Shown here piece after piece: positions 16,220-58,518 of a stretch of DNA of 64,000 bases. A program made the position numbers and the translations under genes. The stretch covers positions 62,001 through 126,000 of the IMG/VR virus record IMGVR_UViG_3300027844_001828; one strand, written 5' to 3'. Position 1 is the first letter of the stretch. Each line of letters starts with the position of its first letter. Below the pieces are notes generated by a model, which saw only the letters and a program-made list of their open reading frames with translations, was not told the origin of the DNA and did no database searches.

Positions 16220-16258
16220 GAAACAATGGGCGGCTAAACAGCCGCCCATTGTTGTTTA
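16220..16258 (+). terminator. Intrinsic terminator (possibly bidirectional)
   Basis: AACAATGGGCGGCT-aaac-AGCCGCCCATTGTT. Confidence 0.8.
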
Positions 16259-16263
16259 TGGAC

Positions 16264-16292
16264 TTGACATATGGTGGTTTCCCCTGTATAAT
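16264..16292 (+). promoter_or_regulatory. sigma70 consensus promoter
   Basis: TTGACA-17 nt-TATAAT, an exact consensus match. Confidence 0.85.
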
Positions 16293-47928: not shown

Positions 47929-48196
47929 CATAGCTTTACTTTTCCGAAAGACAGAGTTATATTGACCCAAATTATTCTAAGGAGGGTTTACATGGCTTCA
48001 GTAAAGGTTGAAAACGCGACAGACATAATCGAGAGATATGAGTCCAGACTCACCAGAAATCAGAAGAGAATCCTCAAATCTATGCAGACGGGAATTTCAT
48101 CATGTTGAGAATCGAAAGGTTTAACCCTGTTTGGACACTCATGAGTCCGAAATTACTGGAAGCGGTTATTGTTCAGAATGTGTAAATGATAGTTAA

Positions 48197-48339
48197 TAAT
48201 GCCCTTTTGGTGGGCGGGTCCAACCTGAGTCAAACCACTATGCAAGGCTGCATGCTTAAGGGTCAACGGGTTAGCTGAGCACCCTACCTACCGCTTCCTA
48301 CACAAATTACGAGCTTACCCGCGCCCCAAAAAGGCATTA
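48197..48339 (+). ncRNA. Unassigned structured RNA (rod-like, 6S-like size)
   Basis: The ends pair (TAATGCC-TTTTGG-GCGGGT with ACCCGC-CCAAAA-GGCATTA) around internal hairpins. Confidence 0.45.
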
Positions 48340-49035
48340 CTAAGGAGAGAGTAAAGTGGATAGCCAGTTGAGAAAAGAATTTGAGGATTGTATCAAAAAT
48401 TGGACATGGGAAGATATTCATAAATCCATGAAGGCGGTAGAGGATTATCCTGACATTGTAGAATTCTTTTGGGGAGAGAACATGCTCAGAGGTCGAGGGT
48501 TTTATCAGGAATCTCTCCTGGGAAGATATTCAGGTGGCTTTGAAAGAAGTGGAGTCCTTTATTGATATCGAAGTATTCTTTGGAGATAAAAAATGCCCAT
48601 GCACAAGCACAGGTGTTTCTTTCAAGGATGGTATAAAAACAGTGTGTTGCGCTCATTGCGGAAAAGTAAAGTGGAGGGTGGGGCCACAGGATCTTACCGG
48701 AAGTCCAGCGTATGGATGCTAATACAAAGATATTTAAAACTACTATTTGGAGACAAAATTAATAACTGGAAAACAAGAGCGTTGATTGGTACGGTTGAAG
48801 AAGTGAGAATTCGTGAAAGAAACTCAACTTGGAAGCGTATGGTAGAATGTGTGGGAAATTGGAAGAAGTGGAAAAGGAAAGGGGACAATGATGAACGATA
48901 ATTACGATAAACCATGAAGGCAAAGTCAGGGCGAGATAAGGATAAGCCCCGGTCGAACATCGGGAACTGGCTCCGTAGATACGTTGAGAGAAGAACGTGT
49001 CGAAAGTGGGAACGAACAAAAACTTCAAAGCTGAC

Positions 49036-49063
49036 TTGACAAATCGAAAAGTCATGGTATAAT
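49036..49063 (+). promoter_or_regulatory. Strong sigma70 promoter of the tRNA array
   Basis: TTGACA-16 nt-TATAAT with extended -10 TG. Confidence 0.85.
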
Positions 49064-49140
49064 AAACACATTGAAAGCAGGAGTTCTTCTCGAAAGTTTA
49101 GTAGCAGTCTAACACAACACAACCTAACAAGGTTAAGAAA

Positions 49141-49233
49141 ATGAAAAGGTTCAGTTTACAATCAAGTCAGCCGTCATTGCCCGAATCGCTCTCCGAGCCA
49201 TTCGTTGCTCCCTGCTGCCAGGTTGTTGCATGA
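49141..49233 (+). CDS. Leader peptide (30 aa) MKRFSLQSSQPSLPESLSEPFVAPCCQVVA
   Basis: Short ORF between the promoter and the terminator. Codons 5-20 encode only S/L/Q/P/E. Confidence 0.7.
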   Translation: MKRFSLQSSQPSLPESLSEPFVAPCCQVVA

Positions 49234-49254
49234 GTCTTTAAGTAGATGTGCCAC

Positions 49255-49306
49255 AAAGGCCTCTGAAGCTGGGAGTAATTCCAGCTTCAGAGGCCTTTTT
49301 GTTTTT
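49255..49306 (+). terminator. Attenuator terminator
   Basis: 15-bp perfect stem GGCCTCTGAAGCTGG/CCAGCTTCAGAGGCC followed by TTTTTGTTTTT. Confidence 0.9.
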
Positions 49307-49314
49307 AGTTTTGA

Positions 49315-49326
49315 GATCTTTGAAAA
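49315..49326 (+). promoter_or_regulatory. rrn-type boxA antitermination element
   Basis: GATCTTTGAAAA directly before the first tRNA. Confidence 0.65.
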
Positions 49327-49340
49327 TTGAATAGTATATA

Positions 49341-49419
49341 AAATTGGTTGTATTATGCATAGTATGTCCACGTTTCGTGGACTTACTGTGTATTATCGGA
49401 GTGTAGGAAAGTCTGGTCA
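49341..49419 (+). repeat. 79-bp perfect direct repeat, copy 1 (hairpin plus tRNA-Pro 5' end)
   Basis: Identical to 50011-50089. Confidence 0.95.
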
Positions 49420-49474
49420 TCGCGCTTGTTCCGGAAACAAGAGAACGAAAGTTCGAATCTTTCCACCCAGACCA
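49397..49474 (+). tRNA. tRNA-Pro(CGG), atypical/chimeric
   Basis: Stem CTTGT/ACAAG, loop TC-CGG-AA, T-arm GAAAG-TTCGAAT-CTTTC, ACCA end. Acceptor mismatches G2:A71 and A4:C69. Confidence 0.6.
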
Positions 49475-49498
49475 GTTTTAATAATAGGAGATTATAAA

Positions 49499-49690
49499 AT
49501 GAATAAAATAGATGATATAGCGAATGATATTATTGCAGGAAGTGAATTGCCAAATTTAATTGAGTTAGTTCCTGAGAATTTTGTTCTTCTTGGAGAGATT
49601 AAAATGGCAATCATGAAAGCTGTTAAGATTGGGTTGAATATGGAAATAGAATTGCAAAAAGAATTTATTCTTAGTGGCAATAAGACTTAA
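49499..49690 (+). CDS. Small hypothetical protein
   Basis: MNKIDDIAND... with an AGGAG RBS. Confidence 0.5.
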   Translation: MNKIDDIANDIIAGSELPNLIELVPENFVLLGEIKMAIMKAVKIGLNMEIELQKEFILSGNKT

Positions 49691-49702
49691 GGAGAAATAA
49701 TA

Positions 49703-49792
49703 ATGTTAGAAATATCTATTGGTTTGGTAGTTGTAATAGTCGCATCATGTTCTTGGCTCGTATGGTTTATGGCAAAGAACGTATGGGGATAA
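49703..49792 (+). CDS. 29-aa single-TM peptide
   Basis: MLEISIGLVVVIVASCSWLVWFMAKNVWG, preceded by TAAGACTTAAGGAGA. Confidence 0.5.
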   Translation: MLEISIGLVVVIVASCSWLVWFMAKNVWG

Positions 49793-49808
49793 GACTTAAG
49801 GAGATACA

Positions 49809-50012
49809 ATGAAAGGGTTGCATTATGATGATGTTGGAAATCGTAAGTTAATTGAAACTTTGGTTACTGTTTTACTTCAAGATGGATTGAAGGGAGAAGA
49901 TATGATTGGGGTTTTAACTAAGAATGGAGCGTTTAAAGTATTGAATGGAGATCAATTATGTGCGGTTGCAGAAGCAATGGAAGAAGTTTATAAGGATATG
50001 TTGTTGAAATAA
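49809..50012 (+). CDS. Small hypothetical protein
   Basis: Preceded by the same TAAGACTTAAGGAGA 15-mer. Confidence 0.55.
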   Translation: MKGLHYDDVGNRKLIETLVTVLLQDGLKGEDMIGVLTKNGAFKVLNGDQLCAVAEAMEEVYKDMLLK

Positions 50013-50089
50013 ATTGGTTGTATTATGCATAGTATGTCCACGTTTCGTGGACTTACTGTGTATTATCGGAGTGTAGGAAAGTCTGGTCA
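50011..50089 (+). repeat. 79-bp perfect direct repeat, copy 2 (ends in a truncated tRNA-Pro 5' fragment)
   Basis: Identical to 49341-49419. Confidence 0.95.
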
Positions 50090-50108
50090 GCGATACCAAT
50101 TTATAAGA

Positions 50109-50184
50109 TGCCTCGTAGCATAACTGGTAATGCAACAGCCTCTGAAGCTGTTTTATCTTGGTTCAAATCCAAGCGGGGTAGCCA
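50109..50184 (+). tRNA. tRNA-Gln(CTG)
   Basis: U1-A72, anticodon arm ACAGC-CTCTGAA-GCTGT, T-arm CTTGG-TTCAAAT-CCAAG, GCCA. Confidence 0.92.
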
Positions 50185-50190
50185 TTTTAT

Positions 50191-50267
50191 AGGGATGAGG
50201 GCTTGTTGGTAAGCCGCATGCTCTGGAAGCATGAGTACTCTGGGTTCGACTCCCAGTATCCTGACCA
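50191..50267 (+). tRNA. tRNA-Pro(TGG), atypical
   Basis: CATGC-TCTGGAA-GCATG, CTGGG-TTCGACT-CCCAG, ACCA. A1:G72 mismatch, C33, A37. Confidence 0.8.
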
Positions 50268-50286: not shown

Positions 50287-50314
50287 TTGACATTCACCTG
50301 TTTTCATGTATATT
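50287..50314 (+). promoter_or_regulatory. Internal sigma70-type promoter
   Basis: TTGACA-16 nt-TATATT upstream of tRNA-Ser. Confidence 0.5.
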
Positions 50315-50400: not shown

Positions 50401-50490
50401 GGAGGGGTGGCTGAGTGGCTAAAGGCACCTGTCTTGAATACAGGAGGGCGTGAAAGCGTCCCGTGGGTTCGAATCCCACTCCCTCTGCCA
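50401..50490 (+). tRNA. tRNA-Ser(TGA)
   Basis: CCTGT-CTTGAAT-ACAGG, long variable arm, GTGGG-TTCGAAT-CCCAC, GCCA. Confidence 0.95.
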
Positions 50491-50493
50491 AAT

Positions 50494-50581
50494 GGCCTCG
50501 TGGCGTAACTGGCAGACGCGGCAGGATTTAAAATCCTGTGTCCGAAAGGGTGTTAGGGTTCGACTCCCTACGAGGTCACCA
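50494..50581 (+). tRNA. tRNA-Leu(TAA)
   Basis: CAGGA-TTTAAAA-TCCTG, long variable arm, TAGGG-TTCGACT-CCCTA, ACCA. Confidence 0.93.
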
Positions 50582-50631
50582 ATTAAAAGGTTATATGATT
50601 TGTTATTCAGAAATATATAGTGAGGTGAATA

Positions 50632-51042
50632 ATGGATTGGTATAAAAAATCAAATGTAGATCTTGAGCAGAGAATAAAAATTCTTGTTCCACAAATGGTC
50701 ACTAAGTCACAAAGTGTTTACGACGCCTGGGATCAAGATGAAGATGGAATTGATGTATGGCTTGGGTGTGGTGGGATATGTCAAGACATTGCTGATGGAA
50801 TATGTGATGTTTTGACAATGAATGGAATTGATTGCACTTCTGTTTCGGCCCAAGTTGGAGAGCAGCATGTATGGGCTATAGCTTATGAAGGAAGCGAGGC
50901 TTTTGATTTAGATATTCATCCTGGAAATTACGAAACTGGTGGTGGGTATAATTGGAAAAAGATACCAGGGGTTGTATTTACCACTGATATGGTGTCAATT
51001 GAACGAAACAGTTTTTTTGATCCTGAGGATGAAGATTATTAG
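50632..51042 (+). CDS. MDWYK-leader protein with a transglutaminase/papain-like Cys-His-Asp pattern
   Basis: GICQDIA...QHVWA...DLDI. SigH-like promoter at 50588-50613. Confidence 0.55.
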   Translation: MDWYKKSNVDLEQRIKILVPQMVTKSQSVYDAWDQDEDGIDVWLGCGGICQDIADGICDVLTMNGIDCTSVSAQVGEQHVWAIAYEGSEAFDLDIHPGNYETGGGYNWKKIPGVVFTTDMVSIERNSFFDPEDEDY

Positions 51043-51092
51043 GAAGAGTTGGCCGAAAGATCGCAGGGTAGCGGCTACTGTCTCTTCTGCCA
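51042..51092 (+). pseudogene. Internally deleted tRNA-Ser remnant
   Basis: GGAAGAG/CTCTTCT acceptor stem plus GCCA, but only 51 nt with the anticodon arm missing. Confidence 0.65.
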
Positions 51093-51108
51093 TTTTATAG
51101 TTTTATGT

Positions 51109-51179
51109 GGAAAGCATCCGGCTGGATGAGGAGGTGCCCAATTGATCAGGGCCGTGGGTTCGAATCCCACTCTATAGCA
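51109..51179 (+). pseudogene. Chimeric tRNA remnant (5' of one tRNA fused to 3' of another)
   Basis: GGAAAGCATCCGGCTGGATGAGGAG is joined to a variable arm plus GTGGGTTCGAATCCCAC. The acceptor strands do not pair and there is no anticodon arm. Confidence 0.55.
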
Positions 51180-51247
51180 ACTTTGTATTTGTTTTGGGCT
51201 TGAGATATAGGCTTGTTGAGATATTGTAATGGTTAAAGAATATAAAT

Positions 51248-51324
51248 GACCCGTTGGACGAATTGGTTAAGTCGTCAGGTTTTCAACCTGAAGATTGCGG
51301 GTTCAAATCCCGCACGGGCCACCA
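51248..51324 (+). tRNA. tRNA-Glu(TTC)
   Basis: TCAGGT-TTTCA-ACCTGA anticodon arm, GCGGG-TTCAAAT-CCCGC, ACCA. A2:C71 mismatch. Confidence 0.9.
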
Positions 51325-51329
51325 GTATT

Positions 51330-51472
51330 ATCCATGCCGACGAAAGTCTCACTAAGTGGAGCCTGTGTTTTGGACATGGGAGAATTTTAATTCTTGTTGA
51401 AAATTGAAATATGAGTAACGTTCGATGATGTCATTCGTCAGCACTCAATTCCGTTTAGCGTCGGTCATGGAT
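51330..51472 (+). ncRNA. Unassigned multi-stem structured RNA
   Basis: Closing stem ATCCATG-CCGACG / CGTCGG-T-CATGGAT, internal hairpins and a 3' U-run. Confidence 0.5.
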
Positions 51473-51563
51473 TTTTATTTTTTTAAAGATAGTTTGTATA
51501 CTAATAACAAGGGTCTAAGAAGTGTTTTCATGAATAATATGAAAACCAAATGGAGATCAATTT

Positions 51564-51773
51564 ATGAGAGTTATAGAAAATAATAAAAAGACCGTGAAGG
51601 TCGCCGATGATAAGACAAAGGCGATGGACATTATAAAAAGTCTTCTTGAAAGATATAGGAATAGTGAGTTGCCTGTTATCATTAACAACATATGCCAAGC
51701 GATCATTGATGAGAATCAAAGACAACCTGGACCTGGTGATATTTTTGAAGAGAAAGTAAAATCAACTGACTAA
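51564..51773 (+). CDS. Small hypothetical protein
   Basis: GGAG RBS. SigH-like promoter at 51510-51535. Confidence 0.55.
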   Translation: MRVIENNKKTVKVADDKTKAMDIIKSLLERYRNSELPVIINNICQAIIDENQRQPGPGDIFEEKVKSTD

Positions 51774-51778
51774 ATTAA

Positions 51779-51807
51779 GGCCTTGTGGTGGAATTTTGGC
51801 AGACACG
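51779..51807 (+). pseudogene. 5' fragment of a tRNA-Leu
   Basis: GGCCTTGTGGTGGAATTTTGGCAGACACG is an acceptor 5' strand plus D-arm. Confidence 0.65.
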
Positions 51808-51870
51808 AAGTTTTAAAATGAAGGTGTCTTTACCATTTCTGAAGAATACTTTATACAAAGGAGTATTTAT

Positions 51871-52407
51871 ATGAAAATAAAGAGCAAAGAACATCTTGAG
51901 AATGTGGTTAAAGAATCTGCAAGTGTTTCAGAGGTTCAGCGTAAATTGGGATATAAACCATCAGGTGGTATACATAAATTTCTTAAAGGTAAGTTTAAAG
52001 AATTTGAAATAGACACTTCTCATTTCACAGGTCAAGGGTGGTCGCTTGGGAAATCAAGGGAGACGGATGAAATTGTTGATATAGTTTCTCGAAAAATAGA
52101 ATCTCCATGGGAACATGTTTTTAGGAAAGGTAACCATAAAACACAAAATGAGACCTTGATTAGACGTTTGATAAGAAGCGGCAAAAGAGAATATAAATGT
52201 GAAGATTGTGGGGTTAAAAAGTGGGGCGACAAACCTCTACGATTGCAACTTGATCATATAAATGGAGACAATTCTGATTGTCAAGAAATAAACTTAAAGA
52301 TTATTTGCCCTAATTGTCATTCTCAAACTGAAACATTTTCAAGAGGAATGAGGGAAAGTAGAAGTTATTATAGAAACAAATGGTGGAAACAATTATCTAT
52401 GAATTAA
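51871..52407 (+). CDS. HNH homing endonuclease (tRNA-associated)
   Basis: IDTSHFTGQGW, CEDC, LQLDHINGDNSD...NLKIICPNCHSQT. Confidence 0.92.
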   Translation: MKIKSKEHLENVVKESASVSEVQRKLGYKPSGGIHKFLKGKFKEFEIDTSHFTGQGWSLGKSRETDEIVDIVSRKIESPWEHVFRKGNHKTQNETLIRRLIRSGKREYKCEDCGVKKWGDKPLRLQLDHINGDNSDCQEINLKIICPNCHSQTETFSRGMRESRSYYRNKWWKQLSMN

Positions 52408-52408
52408 T

Positions 52409-52495
52409 GGTGCTGTGATGGAATTGGCATACATCTATGGTTGAGAATCATAGGCTCGAAAGAGATTGAGGGTTCGAGTCCCTACGAGGCCACCA
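52409..52495 (+). tRNA. tRNA-Leu(GAG), chimeric acceptor stem
   Basis: TATGG-TTGAGAA-TCATA arm, variable arm, TTCGAGT loop, ACCA. G4:G69 and C5:A68 mismatches. Confidence 0.75.
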
Positions 52496-56066: not shown

Positions 56067-56094
56067 TTGAAAAATCTCAATTTGTCGGTATAAT
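56067..56094 (+). promoter_or_regulatory. sigma70-type promoter
   Basis: TTGAAA-16 nt-TATAAT. Confidence 0.65.
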
Positions 56095-56653: not shown

Positions 56654-56889
56654 CTGTCTAATTTAACTAAGGTTCATAGAGAAGAGAAACACTGATGCAT
56701 ACACAATTCATAAACGATGGTTCGACGGCGTTCCCAATAAATGGTAGATTTTTTTAACCTATTCTGATCAGCATAGTAATGTTGGCGTTGAATGGAATCT
56801 ATGGGGAAACTCATGCGGTATAGAATTATCTATAAATGATGAGGGGGGTGGACATTTTATGTGCCCTTGCCACCTATTTCATTGTGGTT

Positions 56890-57036
56890 GTCATTTGCAA
56901 AATAAATGAATGGCTTGGAAATAAAATCACATTACACTTGGATCATAAAAACGGAATAAATAATGATAACAGAATAGAAAATTTAAGAATATTGTGTCCA
57001 AATTGTCATCAACAAACAAAGACTTGGGGTAGATGA
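56890..57036 (+). pseudogene. HNH endonuclease C-terminal fragment overlapping the tRNA-Leu 5' end
   Basis: LHLDHKNGINNDNRIENLRILCPNCHQQT with the N-terminal part missing. Confidence 0.75.
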
Positions 57037-57104
57037 AGGGAACTGGCATACCTCGTTGATTTAGAATCAACGGTTTGGGGGTTCGAATCCCCCTCTACTC
57101 ACCA
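57027..57104 (+). tRNA. tRNA-Leu(TAG), short variable loop
   Basis: GGGTAGA/TCTACTC, GTTGA-TTTAGAA-TCAAC, GGGGG-TTCGAAT-CCCCC, ACCA. Confidence 0.9.
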
Positions 57105-57717: not shown

Positions 57718-58518
57718 ATGAGAATAGTTGATAGTCCAGAATCATACTTAGTTGGGATAACCTCCCTTAACGACATTGGTCTAAATTCATACCTTGATGA
57801 TATAGGAGATCCCGATTGGGACCCTGACATTTCGGTTTCAGATGGGGAGAATTTAATCGAAGCCGCAGGCCGAATGTGCTATCGAAGCTGGCAGGCCTAT
57901 GATCCGGCGAAGCCACTCGCCACCAATCCTAATGTAAAAAAAGTCAGAGAGGGCAACAGGGACTACATTGCCAATGTTCTCAAGCACAAGCATGGATCAA
58001 TCCTTGAACACGTCTCAGCGAGCTTTATCCTCAAAGACGTGTCTCGTGTTTTAACTCATGAAATAACCCGCCACAGAGCCGGGACGGCTTTTTCCCAGGA
58101 AAGCTTAAGATATGTCAGACTTAATGATTTAAGCTTCTGGATTCCCACCTTGATCAAAGAAAATGATGCAGCGATAGAATTGTTCTTGGGTGCGATCACT
58201 CAAATGGAGCAATGGCAAACACAATTGGCCGAAATTTATGATATCGATAATATGAAGGATTTTCACACGAAAAAGCTTCTCACGTCGGCATTTAGAAGAA
58301 TTGCACCGATTGGTCTTTCAACATGTATACTGGTCACAGGAAATTTGCGATCCTGGCGGCACATTGTTGAAATGAGGACTTCAGAAGGCGCTGAGGAAGA
58401 AATTAGAATCAGTTGTGACCAAATCGCCGAGGCACTTTCTGTAGAATTCCCCAATGTGTTCCAGGATATGGAGTTAAATGATAAAGGGGAAAGGATTTTT
58501 GTTAATTCCAAGGTTTAA
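57718..58518 (+). CDS. thyX: Flavin-dependent thymidylate synthase
   Basis: AGRMCY, HGSILEH, VSRVLTHEITRHRAGTAFSQESLRY, NLRSWRH, AEEEIR. Confidence 0.96.
   Translation: MRIVDSPESYLVGITSLNDIGLNSYLDDIGDPDWDPDISVSDGENLIEAAGRMCYRSWQAYDPAKPLATNPNVKKVREGNRDYIANVLKHKHGSILEHVSASFILKDVSRVLTHEITRHRAGTAFSQESLRYVRLNDLSFWIPTLIKENDAAIELFLGAITQMEQWQTQLAEIYDIDNMKDFHTKKLLTSAFRRIAPIGLSTCILVTGNLRSWRHIVEMRTSEGAEEEIRISCDQIAEALSVEFPNVFQDMELNDKGERIFVNSKV

What the first reader, a model, noticed from the sequence alone, without database searches (positions are those of the whole stretch)
49036..49326. Leader-peptide attenuator that appears to take a census of the tRNAs the phage supplies
Seen in sequence: a consensus promoter (49036-49063), a 30-codon ORF (49141-49233), a 15-bp GC terminator (49258-49300), boxA (49315-49326), then the tRNA array. 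Codons 5-20 (AGT TTA CAA TCA AGT CAG CCG TCA TTG CCC GAA TCG CTC TCC GAG CCA) encode only Ser/Leu/Gln/Pro/Glu, the same five amino acids served by the tRNAs found here. They include the exact cognate codon for 7 of the 8 full-length tRNAs (TTA, TCA, CAG, CCG, GAA, CTC, CCA). The exception is Leu-TAG, which lies 7 kb away behind another promoter. The leader's last codons (CTCCCTGCTGCCAGG, 49208-49222) can pair imperfectly with the terminator 5' arm and loop (CCTCTGAAGCTGGGAG, 49260-49275), forming an antiterminator. Established: this is the geometry of trp/his-type attenuation, and hosts deplete tRNAs with anticodon nucleases. Inference: smooth translation lets the terminator form, while stalling on any depleted or cleaved tRNA frees the antiterminator and turns on phage tRNA transcription. 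That would be a multi-codon sensor for a tRNA operon rather than a biosynthetic operon.
Basis: partly seen in the sequence, partly recalled or inferred. Interest (0 to 1): 0.93.

Follow-up and report, generated by a model that had tools for sequence, protein, structure and literature searches.

The report
Possible ribosome-gated terminator before phage tRNAs
In an uncultured marine jumbo phage, a very strong promoter, a 30-codon reading frame and the genome's strongest terminator sit just before a tRNA gene block; the frame's codons match those tRNAs far better than chance, so it may switch tRNA production on when translation stalls, but this is plausible rather than shown.

Summary
The anatomy is real. 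There is a 12/12 sigma-70 promoter with TG (49036-49063) and a 30-codon ATG ORF (49141-49233). The strongest hairpin-plus-U-tract terminator of the whole 235-kb phage genome follows (49255-49306), then the tRNAs.

The codon match is real and unusual. Seven of eight cognate codons are present (p about 0.003-0.004 under three null models). A 16-residue run uses only the five amino acids served by the array (0 of 20,000 shuffles).

I applied a nascent-RNA test to the leader and calibrated it on E. coli thrL, hisL and trpL. The leader behaves like a true attenuator: the terminator's 5' arm is sequestered when a ribosome stalls on the census codons (0.61) and freed when it reaches the stop (0.20). 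That contrast occurs in 1.3% of shuffles, but it depends on the footprint assumed.

Evidence against:
- The boxA is a chance-level match.
- The Shine-Dalgarno is weak.
- The signal is mostly at amino-acid level, not codon level.
- A near-consensus internal promoter (50287) serves four of the seven counted tRNAs.
- There is no anti-antiterminator.
- No relatives exist to test conservation, and the public RNA data are too thin.

The parts
49036..49063 (+). Sigma-70 promoter: -35 TTGACA (49036-49041), 16-nt spacer, extended -10 TGgTATAAT (-10 at 49058-49063). The start site is predicted near 49070.
   Evidence: 12/12 match. All 17 near-consensus promoters in the genome lie on the + strand.
49070..49140 (+). 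Predicted 5' untranslated leader. It contains a weak AAGG Shine-Dalgarno at 49129-49132, inside a small 5-bp hairpin.
   Evidence: SD pairing energy is -3.3 kcal/mol, against a gene median of -5.6 and a random-position median of -2.5.
49141..49233 (+). 30-codon leader ORF (ATG to TGA).
   Evidence: Gene callers did not call it in any metagenome copy. It has no recognisable protein relatives.
49153..49200 (+). Census core, codons 5-20. It encodes only Ser, Leu, Gln, Pro and Glu, uses 14 distinct codons, and includes 7 of the 8 codons cognate to the window's tRNAs.
49205..49224 (+). Putative antiterminator 5' strand (ORF codons 22-28). It pairs with 49255-49278 in the nascent RNA.
49255..49306 (+). 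Intrinsic terminator: 20-pair stem (49255-49274 with 49279-49298), GUAA loop, and U-tract T5GT5 ending at 49306.
   Evidence: It is the strongest in the genome. Its 5' arm holds a 13-nt copy of the tRNA-Gln anticodon stem-loop.
49341..49422 (+). First copy of an 82-nt direct repeat (second copy at 50011-50092). It comprises a hairpin plus the first 26 nt of tRNA-Pro(CGG). The two copies bracket a 670-bp cassette.
49397..50267 (+). First tRNA block, reachable only by read-through of the terminator or from weak promoters. It holds tRNA-Pro(CGG) 49397-49474, three small ORFs, tRNA-Gln(CTG) 50109-50184 and tRNA-Pro(TGG) 50191-50267.
50287..50314 (+). Internal near-consensus promoter (TTGACA, 16 nt, TATATT; 11/12). 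No terminator lies between it and tRNA-Ser.
50401..52495 (+). Second tRNA block behind promoter 50287. It holds Ser(TGA) 50401-50490, Leu(TAA) 50494-50581, Glu(TTC) 51248-51324 and Leu(GAG) 52409-52495, interleaved with ORFs including an HNH endonuclease.
57027..57104 (+). tRNA-Leu(TAG), the one tRNA whose cognate codon (CTA) is absent from the leader. It lies behind promoter 56067-56094.

Best explanation
This is a transcription attenuator at the head of the phage's tRNA region, most likely ribosome-controlled and of the thr-operon type.

Proposed mechanism:
- Host RNA polymerase starts at the consensus promoter, near 49070.
- A ribosome translates the 30-codon ORF.
- If the ribosome runs to the stop codon, it covers about 49216-49245. 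That breaks the pairing between 49205-49224 and the terminator's 5' arm, so the 20-bp terminator forms and transcription ends near 49306.
- If the ribosome is held up on codons 5-17, or never loads, the 5' arm stays paired upstream. More polymerases then read through into tRNA-Pro(CGG), tRNA-Gln and tRNA-Pro(TGG), adding to transcription of the later block. Codons 5-17 sample the codon families of the five amino acids that the array serves.

Shown here: the sequence elements, the statistical match of codons to tRNAs, and the predicted position-dependent switch in folding.

Inferred: that the ORF is translated, that the terminator is bypassable, and that stalling on these codons is the signal.
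For: - Architecture: the order is promoter, 190 nt, terminator. This is the reverse of the genome's only other strong hairpin, where the terminator at 16222-16253 precedes the promoter at 16264. That points to a deliberate short transcript or a gate.
- Position: the ORF ends 22 nt before the terminator foot. A suitably placed ORF of 20 or more codons arises in 13% of shuffled leaders.
- Census at codon level: 7/8 cognate codons. This occurs in 0.28% of six-frame 30-codon windows and in 0.27% of ORF shuffles. It occurs in 0.4% of shuffled leaders, and in 0 of 57,681 windows of 16 codons in real genes.
- Census at amino-acid level: a Ser/Leu/Gln/Pro/Glu run of 16 occurs in 0 of 20,000 shuffles. 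It is the only non-repetitive run of that length in the genome.
- Switch: the fraction of the terminator 5' arm paired upstream is 0.61 for a ribosome on codons 6-17 and 0.20 at the stop. The same test gives 0.99/0.05 for thrL, 0.64/0.36 for hisL and 0.73/0.13 for trpL. A contrast this large occurs in 1.3% of 600 dinucleotide shuffles.
- Energetics: the equilibrium advantage of the terminator is 25 kcal/mol. That lies inside the range of the three true attenuators, 14-32 kcal/mol.
Against: - The Shine-Dalgarno is weak: -3.3 kcal/mol, against -7.3 to -9.2 for neighbouring genes, and close to random positions.
- The match is mostly at amino-acid level. AGT (twice), CAA and TCC are read by no phage tRNA.
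- Given the peptide, eight cognate codons is what codon usage predicts (p 0.35). Only the 'one of each' pattern is mildly unusual (p 0.04).
- Each tRNA is sampled by only one or two codons.
- Promoter 50287 (11/12) serves four of the seven counted tRNAs with no terminator in its path.
- No anti-antiterminator exists. The untranslated leader already sequesters the arm (0.61), and the leader body folds no better than shuffles (z -0.39).
- The switch vanishes with a -12..+12 footprint.
- Arm sequestration as such is not special: the shuffle mean is 0.62.
- No relatives were found, so there is no conservation or covariation evidence.
- RNA data are uninformative.
- The pattern was noticed post hoc.
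Confidence: 0.33

Rival explanations
1. This is a stand-alone short transcription unit. The consensus promoter makes a discrete RNA of about 235 nt, which is either a regulatory small RNA or the mRNA of a 30-residue peptide. It ends at a constitutive strong terminator that also insulates the tRNA region from the long upstream + strand operon. The tRNAs are made from other promoters (50287, and weak sites near 49327 and 50004). The codon match is coincidence.
For: - A promoter plus a strong terminator is the standard anatomy of a small RNA gene.
- The terminator is the first on the + strand after about 14 kb of + strand genes.
- The internal promoter 50287 is near-consensus.
- The weak Shine-Dalgarno fits a non-coding RNA.
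- Large lytic phages commonly carry short early units (general knowledge).
Against: - It leaves the codon and amino-acid match (p about 0.003 or lower) and the position-specific alternative pairing (p about 0.013) as two unrelated coincidences.
- There is no Rfam family match.
- There is no excess complementarity to phage translation-start regions: best -34.5 kcal/mol, against a shuffled-RNA best of -34.4 +/- 1.7.
- The peptide resembles no known protein.
- The leader body is undetected in two of three metatranscriptomes that do hold flanking sequence. That argues weakly against an abundant stable RNA.
Confidence: 0.3
2. This is a terminator gate that works without the ribosome. The alternative pairing of 49205-49224 with the terminator arm makes read-through the default. 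A phage or host factor, an antisense RNA, or simply transcription speed sets the termination ratio. The result is either a fixed 'leaky' dose of early tRNA transcription or a temporal switch. The ORF and its codons are incidental.
For: - The nascent RNA sequesters the arm even with no ribosome (0.61).
- The alternative partner lies just upstream of the terminator.
- The geometry recalls lambda pR'-tR', where a short RNA is made until an antiterminator acts (general knowledge).
Against: - No Q-type antiterminator domain is found in the genome for PF06530 or PF03589. The PF06323 search was uninformative.
- The boxA-like site is chance-level and lies after the terminator.
- It does not explain the codon match.
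- Arm sequestration of 0.6 is what random leaders also give.
Confidence: 0.2
3. This is a by-product of tRNA-array scrambling. The hairpin arose as an inverted duplication of a tRNA-Gln anticodon-arm fragment during the recombination that also produced the 82-nt repeats and the orphan T-arm. The unit has no dedicated regulatory role.
For: - There is a 13-nt exact (16/18) match between the terminator 5' arm and the tRNA-Gln anticodon stem-loop. The alignment score exceeds all 300 shuffles against the eight tRNAs.
- Other tRNA fragments lie at 50067-50092 and 51152-51172.
- The 3' two-thirds of tRNA-Pro(CGG) occurs in another genomic context in L036-L038.
Against: - A 13-nt match has BLAST E = 0.67 against the whole genome.
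- The leader body has no similarity to tRNAs.
- Origin does not exclude function.
- A perfect 20-bp stem with a U-tract and a 12/12 promoter look maintained.
Confidence: 0.07

Closest known systems
E. coli thr operon attenuator (thrL), together with the multivalent ilvGMEDA leader
   Same: - It has a promoter-proximal terminator.
- It has a short ORF whose last codons form the 5' strand of the antiterminator.
- A ribosome at the stop codon frees the terminator arm.
- It has regulatory codons for more than one amino acid.
- In the same in-silico test, thrL gives 0.99/0.05 and the phage leader 0.61/0.20.
   Different: - Known leaders gate amino-acid biosynthesis genes and use runs of the same codon (8 Thr plus 4 Ile).
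- Here the gated genes are tRNAs, five amino acids are sampled, and each codon appears once or twice.
- There is no 1:2 anti-antiterminator.
- The SD is weak.
- Nothing matches the Rfam leader families.
pheST (pheM leader) attenuation of phenylalanyl-tRNA synthetase (from my own knowledge)
   Same: A leader peptide gates a gene of the translation apparatus, so the signal is the supply of a usable tRNA rather than a metabolite end-product.
   Different: - It involves a single amino acid.
- It is a bacterial chromosomal operon.
- The product is a synthetase, not tRNAs.
T-box riboswitches
   Same: They sense tRNA status and decide between a terminator and an antiterminator upstream of translation-related genes.
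   Different: - T-boxes bind uncharged tRNA directly through a specifier codon and a conserved T-box sequence, with no ribosome.
- No T-box match was found here.
- T-boxes are specific to one tRNA.
Lambda pR'-tR' (6S RNA) with Q antitermination, and N/nut boxA systems
   Same: A strong promoter is followed about 200 nt later by a strong terminator that guards a downstream block. A short RNA is the default product.
   Different: - No Q-like protein domain was found.
- The boxA-like site is at chance level and lies downstream of the terminator.
Phage-encoded small RNAs with their own promoter and intrinsic terminator
   Same: The size (about 235 nt), the promoter and the terminator hairpin with U-tail all fit.
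   Different: - No family match was found.
- No target complementarity above chance was found among the 303 + strand phage translation-start regions tested.
- Host targets are untestable.

Membership tests
Ribosome-mediated (leader-peptide) transcription attenuator | An intrinsic terminator lies between a promoter and the regulated genes on the same strand. | tested here: met
   Promoter at 49036-49063, terminator at 49255-49306, first tRNA at 49397.
Ribosome-mediated (leader-peptide) transcription attenuator | A short ORF with start codon and ribosome-binding site ends close to the terminator. | tested here: inconclusive
   The ATG ORF of 30 codons ends 22 nt before the stem. The SD is only AAGG at -3.3 kcal/mol, near the level of random positions.
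Ribosome-mediated (leader-peptide) transcription attenuator | Regulatory codons are matched to what the operon supplies. | tested here: met
   Seven of eight cognate codons, p 0.003-0.004. A run of 16 residues uses only the five served amino acids, 0 of 20,000 shuffles. Caveat: given the peptide, the count of cognate codons is not enriched.
Ribosome-mediated (leader-peptide) transcription attenuator | An antiterminator pairing is exposed by a stalled ribosome and blocked by a ribosome at the stop codon. | tested here: inconclusive
   The values are 0.61 against 0.20 with a -15..+14 footprint. That contrast occurs in 1.3% of shuffles, and the positive controls behave alike. It is lost with a -12..+12 footprint. 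The duplex z-score is -2.1, against about -4 for thrL and hisL.
Ribosome-mediated (leader-peptide) transcription attenuator | An anti-antiterminator or pause hairpin (1:2) causes termination when the leader is not translated. | tested here: not met
   With no ribosome the arm is already sequestered (0.61, against 0.13-0.44 in thrL, hisL and trpL). The leader body fold has z -0.39.
Ribosome-mediated (leader-peptide) transcription attenuator | Read-through depends on translation of the ORF and on its codons. | not testable with these tools
   This needs reporter, Term-seq or Ribo-seq data. Public metatranscriptome contigs cover the leader at about 2x in one run only.
Ribosome-mediated (leader-peptide) transcription attenuator | The ORF and the alternative helices are conserved in relatives. 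| not testable with these tools
   No syntenic relative was found in GenBank phages, IMG/VR, JGI metagenomes or the 5.8-billion-protein collection. All copies found are 100% identical.
Rfam leader, T-box or other curated cis-regulatory RNA families | A covariance-model match. | tested here: not met
   Only meaningless microRNA-model hits on the hairpin at E 0.35-0.87. No leader or T-box family matched.
Lambda-type N/nut antitermination | A boxA consensus upstream of the terminators it overrides. | tested here: not met
   A 9/12 match at 49315-49326. The window holds 99 matches of that quality against 74 expected, and the site lies after the terminator.
Q-type antitermination (pR'-tR') | A Q-family antiterminator protein encoded by the phage. 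| tested here: not met
   PF06530 and PF03589 give no match in the 235-kb genome. The PF06323 search was uninformative because its control was silent.
Trans-acting small RNA | Its own promoter and an intrinsic terminator bound a short RNA. | tested here: met
Trans-acting small RNA | Seed complementarity to targets above chance. | tested here: not met
   Tested against 303 + strand phage start regions only: best -34.5 kcal/mol, against a shuffled best of -34.4 +/- 1.7. Host targets are unknown.

The most novel reading that the evidence does not exclude
A phage uses a thr-type leader-peptide attenuator to gate its own tRNA genes. The leader ORF samples nearly every codon box of the five amino acids that the array serves. 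Slow decoding could arise from scarce host tRNAs, tRNA cleavage by a defence nuclease, or a general translation block. In each case slow decoding raises transcription of replacement tRNAs, and ample tRNA shuts it down. This would be the first ribosome-mediated attenuator known to control a tRNA operon, and a self-adjusting tRNA supply in a virus.
Probability: 0.33. Interest if true: 0.87.

Novelty: new variant of a known kind. Interest (0 to 1): 0.62.

Why it matters
Phage tRNA genes are currently explained in two ways. One is codon-usage compensation. The other is replacement of host tRNAs destroyed by defence nucleases (for example PMC11555353 and PMC12409363, found). How phages regulate these genes is largely unknown.

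A leader whose own translation reports on the tRNA pool would give a simple feedback loop. It would extend classical attenuation from amino-acid biosynthesis to the translation machinery of a virus. It could also be tested directly in a defined-tRNA in vitro system.

My full-text searches found no described leader-peptide control of a phage tRNA array.

If it is instead a coincidence, the locus is an ordinary early promoter and terminator unit.

Tried and rejected
1. 'The terminator is too strong for the antiterminator' (25 kcal/mol at equilibrium). I rejected my own argument. thrL, hisL and trpL give 14-32 kcal/mol in the same calculation.

2. 'The stalled-ribosome geometry is wrong because the last census codons mask the antiterminator.' thrL has the same layout.

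3. boxA is at chance level.

4. The leader as a degenerate tRNA. ARAGORN at relaxed thresholds finds nothing, and the alignment score equals the shuffle mean.

5. Local base composition as the cause of the Ser/Leu/Gln/Pro/Glu run. Dinucleotide shuffles never reproduce it.

6. Relatives:
- DNA search of GenBank phages.
- tblastn with the 482-aa, 1596-aa and DNA-polymerase proteins.
- IMG/VR scans with five proteins and two DNA patterns.
- Protein searches with the 482-aa, 63-aa and ThyX proteins, with context look-ups.
- One metagenome scan and one genome scan.
- These returned only identical copies, unrelated phages, or a mosaic relative lacking the leader.

7. Strain microdiversity. Seven independent metagenome contigs are 100% identical over 47929-50100, or as far as they reach.

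8. Metatranscriptomes X13, X14 and X20 have about 2x patchy contig coverage and no usable ends.

9. Other large phages sharing the 136-aa protein carry up to 46 tRNAs and are not syntenic (six of the twelve records have none). They give no power for a codon/anticodon correlation.

10. The peptide as a known protein: no match.

11. Small-RNA targets in the phage: none above chance (a first attempt timed out).

Full report
**Context**

The window is bases 62001-126000 of a 235,624-bp IMG/VR virus record rated 93% complete. The phage is uncultured. It recurs at 100% identity in many seawater metagenomes.

- It encodes a DnaE-like DNA polymerase, SbcCD, a UvsX-like recombinase, PhoH, ThyX and a dCTP-deaminase-like protein.
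- The polymerase is only about 34% identical to anything in GenBank phages.
- The closest ThyX proteins are bacterial, at 60-65% identity.
- Genes run almost entirely on the + strand.
- All 17 promoter sites matching the sigma-70 consensus at 11/12 or better lie on that strand. This is strong evidence that host-type promoters are really used.

**Checking the observation**

- The promoter at 49036-49063 is a perfect TTGACA, 16 nt, TATAAT with an extended -10 TG. It is one of three perfect sites in the genome.
- The ORF runs from ATG 49141 to TGA 49233 and has 30 codons. Codons 5-20 encode only Ser, Leu, Gln, Pro and Glu.
It has a 20-pair stem at 49255-49298 (-36.8 kcal/mol) followed by T5GT5.
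- A genome-wide scan found only one other long hairpin with a T-rich tail, at 16222-16253. There the terminator precedes a promoter (16264), which is the usual order. At this locus the order is reversed, which implies either a deliberate short transcript or a gate.
- ARAGORN confirms the eight tRNAs. The whole genome has three more elsewhere: two Met and Arg-TCT.
- The 'boxA' is a 9/12 match. The window contains 99 matches of that quality against 74 expected by chance, so it carries no weight.

**Is the census more than chance?**

The ORF contains the Watson-Crick cognate codon of seven of the eight tRNAs. Several null models agree:

| Null model | Frequency of 7 or more of 8 cognates |
|---|---|
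| All 30-codon windows of the genome, six frames | 0.28% |
| Dinucleotide shuffles of the ORF | 0.27% |
| Shuffled leaders containing any ATG ORF of 20+ codons | 0.4% |
| 16-codon windows inside real genes | 0 of 57,681 |
| 16-codon windows, six frames | 11 distinct loci genome-wide |

A hypergeometric estimate of my own for a random set of eight codons gives about 0.4%.

The amino-acid pattern is stronger. A run of 16 residues drawn only from the five served amino acids never appeared in 20,000 shuffles. It is the only non-repetitive run of that length in the genome.

Given the peptide, however, the codon level adds little.
- Eight cognate codons of 16 is what codon usage predicts (p 0.35).
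- Only the 'one of each' pattern is mildly unusual: 14 distinct codons (p 0.05) and seven distinct cognates (p 0.04).
- Four core codons (AGT twice, CAA, TCC) are decoded by no phage tRNA.

The leader therefore looks more like a sampler of the codon boxes of five amino acids than a list of the phage's own anticodons.

**Mechanism tests**

The leader upstream of the terminator is not unusually structured (z -0.39). At equilibrium the terminator wins by 25 kcal/mol wherever a ribosome is placed. I first read that as evidence against an antiterminator. I then ran the same calculations on E. coli thrL, hisL and trpL, fetched. They give 14-32 kcal/mol, so the argument is void.

A more mechanistic test looks at the nascent RNA just before the 3' arm is made. 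It asks what fraction of the terminator's 5' arm is paired upstream:

| Leader | Ribosome stalled on regulatory codons | Ribosome at stop | No ribosome |
|---|---|---|---|
| thrL | 0.99 | 0.05 | 0.44 |
| hisL | 0.64 | 0.36 | 0.26 |
| trpL | 0.73 | 0.13 | 0.13 |
| Phage leader | 0.61 | 0.20 | 0.61 |

- In 600 dinucleotide shuffles of the leader, sequestration itself is ordinary (mean 0.62). A stall-minus-stop contrast of 0.40 or more occurs in only 1.3% of shuffles, and the joint condition in 0.3%.
- The arm's partner (49205-49224) therefore lies just where a terminating ribosome would interfere.
- The result holds for footprints of -15..+14 and -13..+16 and is weaker for -11..+17. It vanishes for -12..+12.
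- Unlike the classical leaders, the untranslated phage leader already sequesters the arm. There is no anti-antiterminator, and the default without translation would be read-through.

- The Shine-Dalgarno is AAGG (-3.3 kcal/mol). The gene median is -5.6, the four neighbouring small genes give -7.3 to -9.2, and random positions give -2.5.
- No gene caller called the ORF in any metagenome copy.
- A second near-consensus promoter at 50287 lies directly before tRNA-Ser with no terminator between them. Ser, Leu-TAA, Glu and Leu-GAG therefore do not depend on the leader. Only Pro-CGG, Gln and Pro-TGG do.
- The first tRNA after the leader sits in a 670-bp cassette bracketed by 82-nt direct repeats. 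Its 3' two-thirds, together with the adjacent 63-aa ORF, occur at 99% identity in a different genomic context. There they lie behind an Fe-S assembly gene and without any leader (L036-L038). The present arrangement may therefore be recent.

**Expression**

- Three marine metatranscriptomes hold parts of the region as assembled contigs at about 2-6x.
- Only one (X14) holds about half of the leader, and it has similar depth on both sides of the terminator.
- Another (X13) has a contig running across the promoter from upstream.
- DNA carry-over cannot be excluded, and contigs carry no strand or end information.
- Nothing can be concluded about termination or read-through.

**Relatives**

Conservation would be the decisive computational test. 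I searched GenBank phages, IMG/VR, JGI metagenomes, GTDB genomes and the 5.8-billion-protein collection, using flanking proteins, tRNA and terminator patterns and core genes.

- The searches returned identical copies, unrelated phages, or the mosaic relative noted above.
- One distant phage array (L040: Pro-TGG, Leu-CAA, Trp, Leu-TAA) has no terminator-gated leader.
- The 63-aa ORF next to the leader has no homologue at all.
- Conservation and covariation therefore remain untested.

**Rivals**

- A stand-alone small RNA or mini-gene fits the promoter-terminator anatomy and the weak SD. It has no positive support. There is no Rfam match, no target complementarity above chance in the phage, and no recognisable peptide. 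It also leaves two independent coincidences unexplained.
- A ribosome-independent gate fits the default sequestration. It lacks a factor, since no Q-type domains were found, and it does not explain the codons.
- The terminator arm shares 13 contiguous bases with the tRNA-Gln anticodon stem-loop. That may tell something about its origin, but a match of that length has E 0.67 genome-wide.

**Comparison and novelty**

- The closest working analogue is the thr or ilv type of multivalent leader-peptide attenuator.
- The closest in purpose are pheST attenuation and T-boxes, which tie expression of translation genes to tRNA status (my own knowledge).
- The locus matches no curated family, and one defining feature of classical attenuators, the 1:2 hairpin, is not met. 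It should not be filed as a member, only as working like one if the model holds.
- Full-text searches found no report of leader-peptide control of phage tRNA genes.

**Verdict**

I put the ribosome-gated, tRNA-matched attenuator at about 0.33, a stand-alone short transcript at about 0.30, a ribosome-independent gate at about 0.20, and the remainder elsewhere. The case rests on two statistical coincidences seen post hoc in one clonal genome. It is testable with simple constructs.

Noticed in passing
49341-49422 and 50011-50092: An 82-nt direct repeat (99% identical) made of a 7-bp hairpin plus the first 26 nt of tRNA-Pro(CGG). It brackets a 670-bp cassette holding tRNA-Pro(CGG) and ORFs of 63, 29 and 67 aa. 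RNA run X14 holds a contig joining 50010 back to 49341. This is probably an assembly path through the repeat, but a tandem or circular form is not excluded.
   Followed up: partly
L036-L038 (JGI metagenome contigs); window 49425-49690: The 3' two-thirds of tRNA-Pro(CGG) plus the 63-aa ORF occur at 99% identity in another genome context. They sit directly behind an FeS_assembly_P (PF01883) gene, with different sequence on both sides. The same contig also has a 90-nt 100% match to genome position 216270-216359. This is a co-occurring mosaic relative or a mobile cassette.
   Followed up: partly
49259-49271 versus 50138-50150: The terminator's 5' arm carries a 13-nt exact copy (16/18 over 49254-49271) of the tRNA-Gln(CTG) anticodon stem-loop. 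Its 3' arm is therefore antisense to that tRNA. The match is significant against the eight tRNAs (it beats all 300 shuffles) but has E 0.67 genome-wide.
   Followed up: partly
51152-51172: An orphan 21/21 copy of the T-arm of tRNA-Ser(TGA) (50461-50481) with no tRNA around it. Rfam reports it as a partial tmRNA-like hit.
   Followed up: no
48356-48722: Two copies of a WEDI...VEFF(W)G motif lie in different reading frames, followed by a Cys-rich tail (CPC...CCAHC). A single protein would need a frameshift near 48480-48500. The sequence is identical in all metagenome copies, so it is not an assembly error.
   Followed up: partly
56836-57036; also genome 215270-215470 and 218070-218170 (outside the window): Small HNH-like ORFs end right at tRNA-Leu(TAG). 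From reading the sequence, the same holds at tRNA-Arg(TCT) and the second tRNA-Met. This suggests tRNA genes travel with homing-endonuclease cassettes.
   Followed up: no
Whole genome; in the window 9538, 13422, 16264, 24633, 49036, 50287 and 56067: All 17 sigma-70 promoter matches of 11/12 or better are on the + strand. Only two long hairpin terminators exist in 235 kb. The phage seems to rely on host-type promoters with very few intrinsic terminators.
   Followed up: yes
57718-58518: The phage ThyX is 60-65% identical to proteins of Lentisphaerae and Desulfobacterota genome bins and has no closer viral relative. This hints at acquisition from bacteria.
   Followed up: no
Genome 168010-168700 (window coordinates 106010-106700, outside the window): The sequence around the first tRNA-Met looks like a long, GC-rich structured RNA with many short hairpins rather than coding DNA. 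It was not examined further.
   Followed up: no
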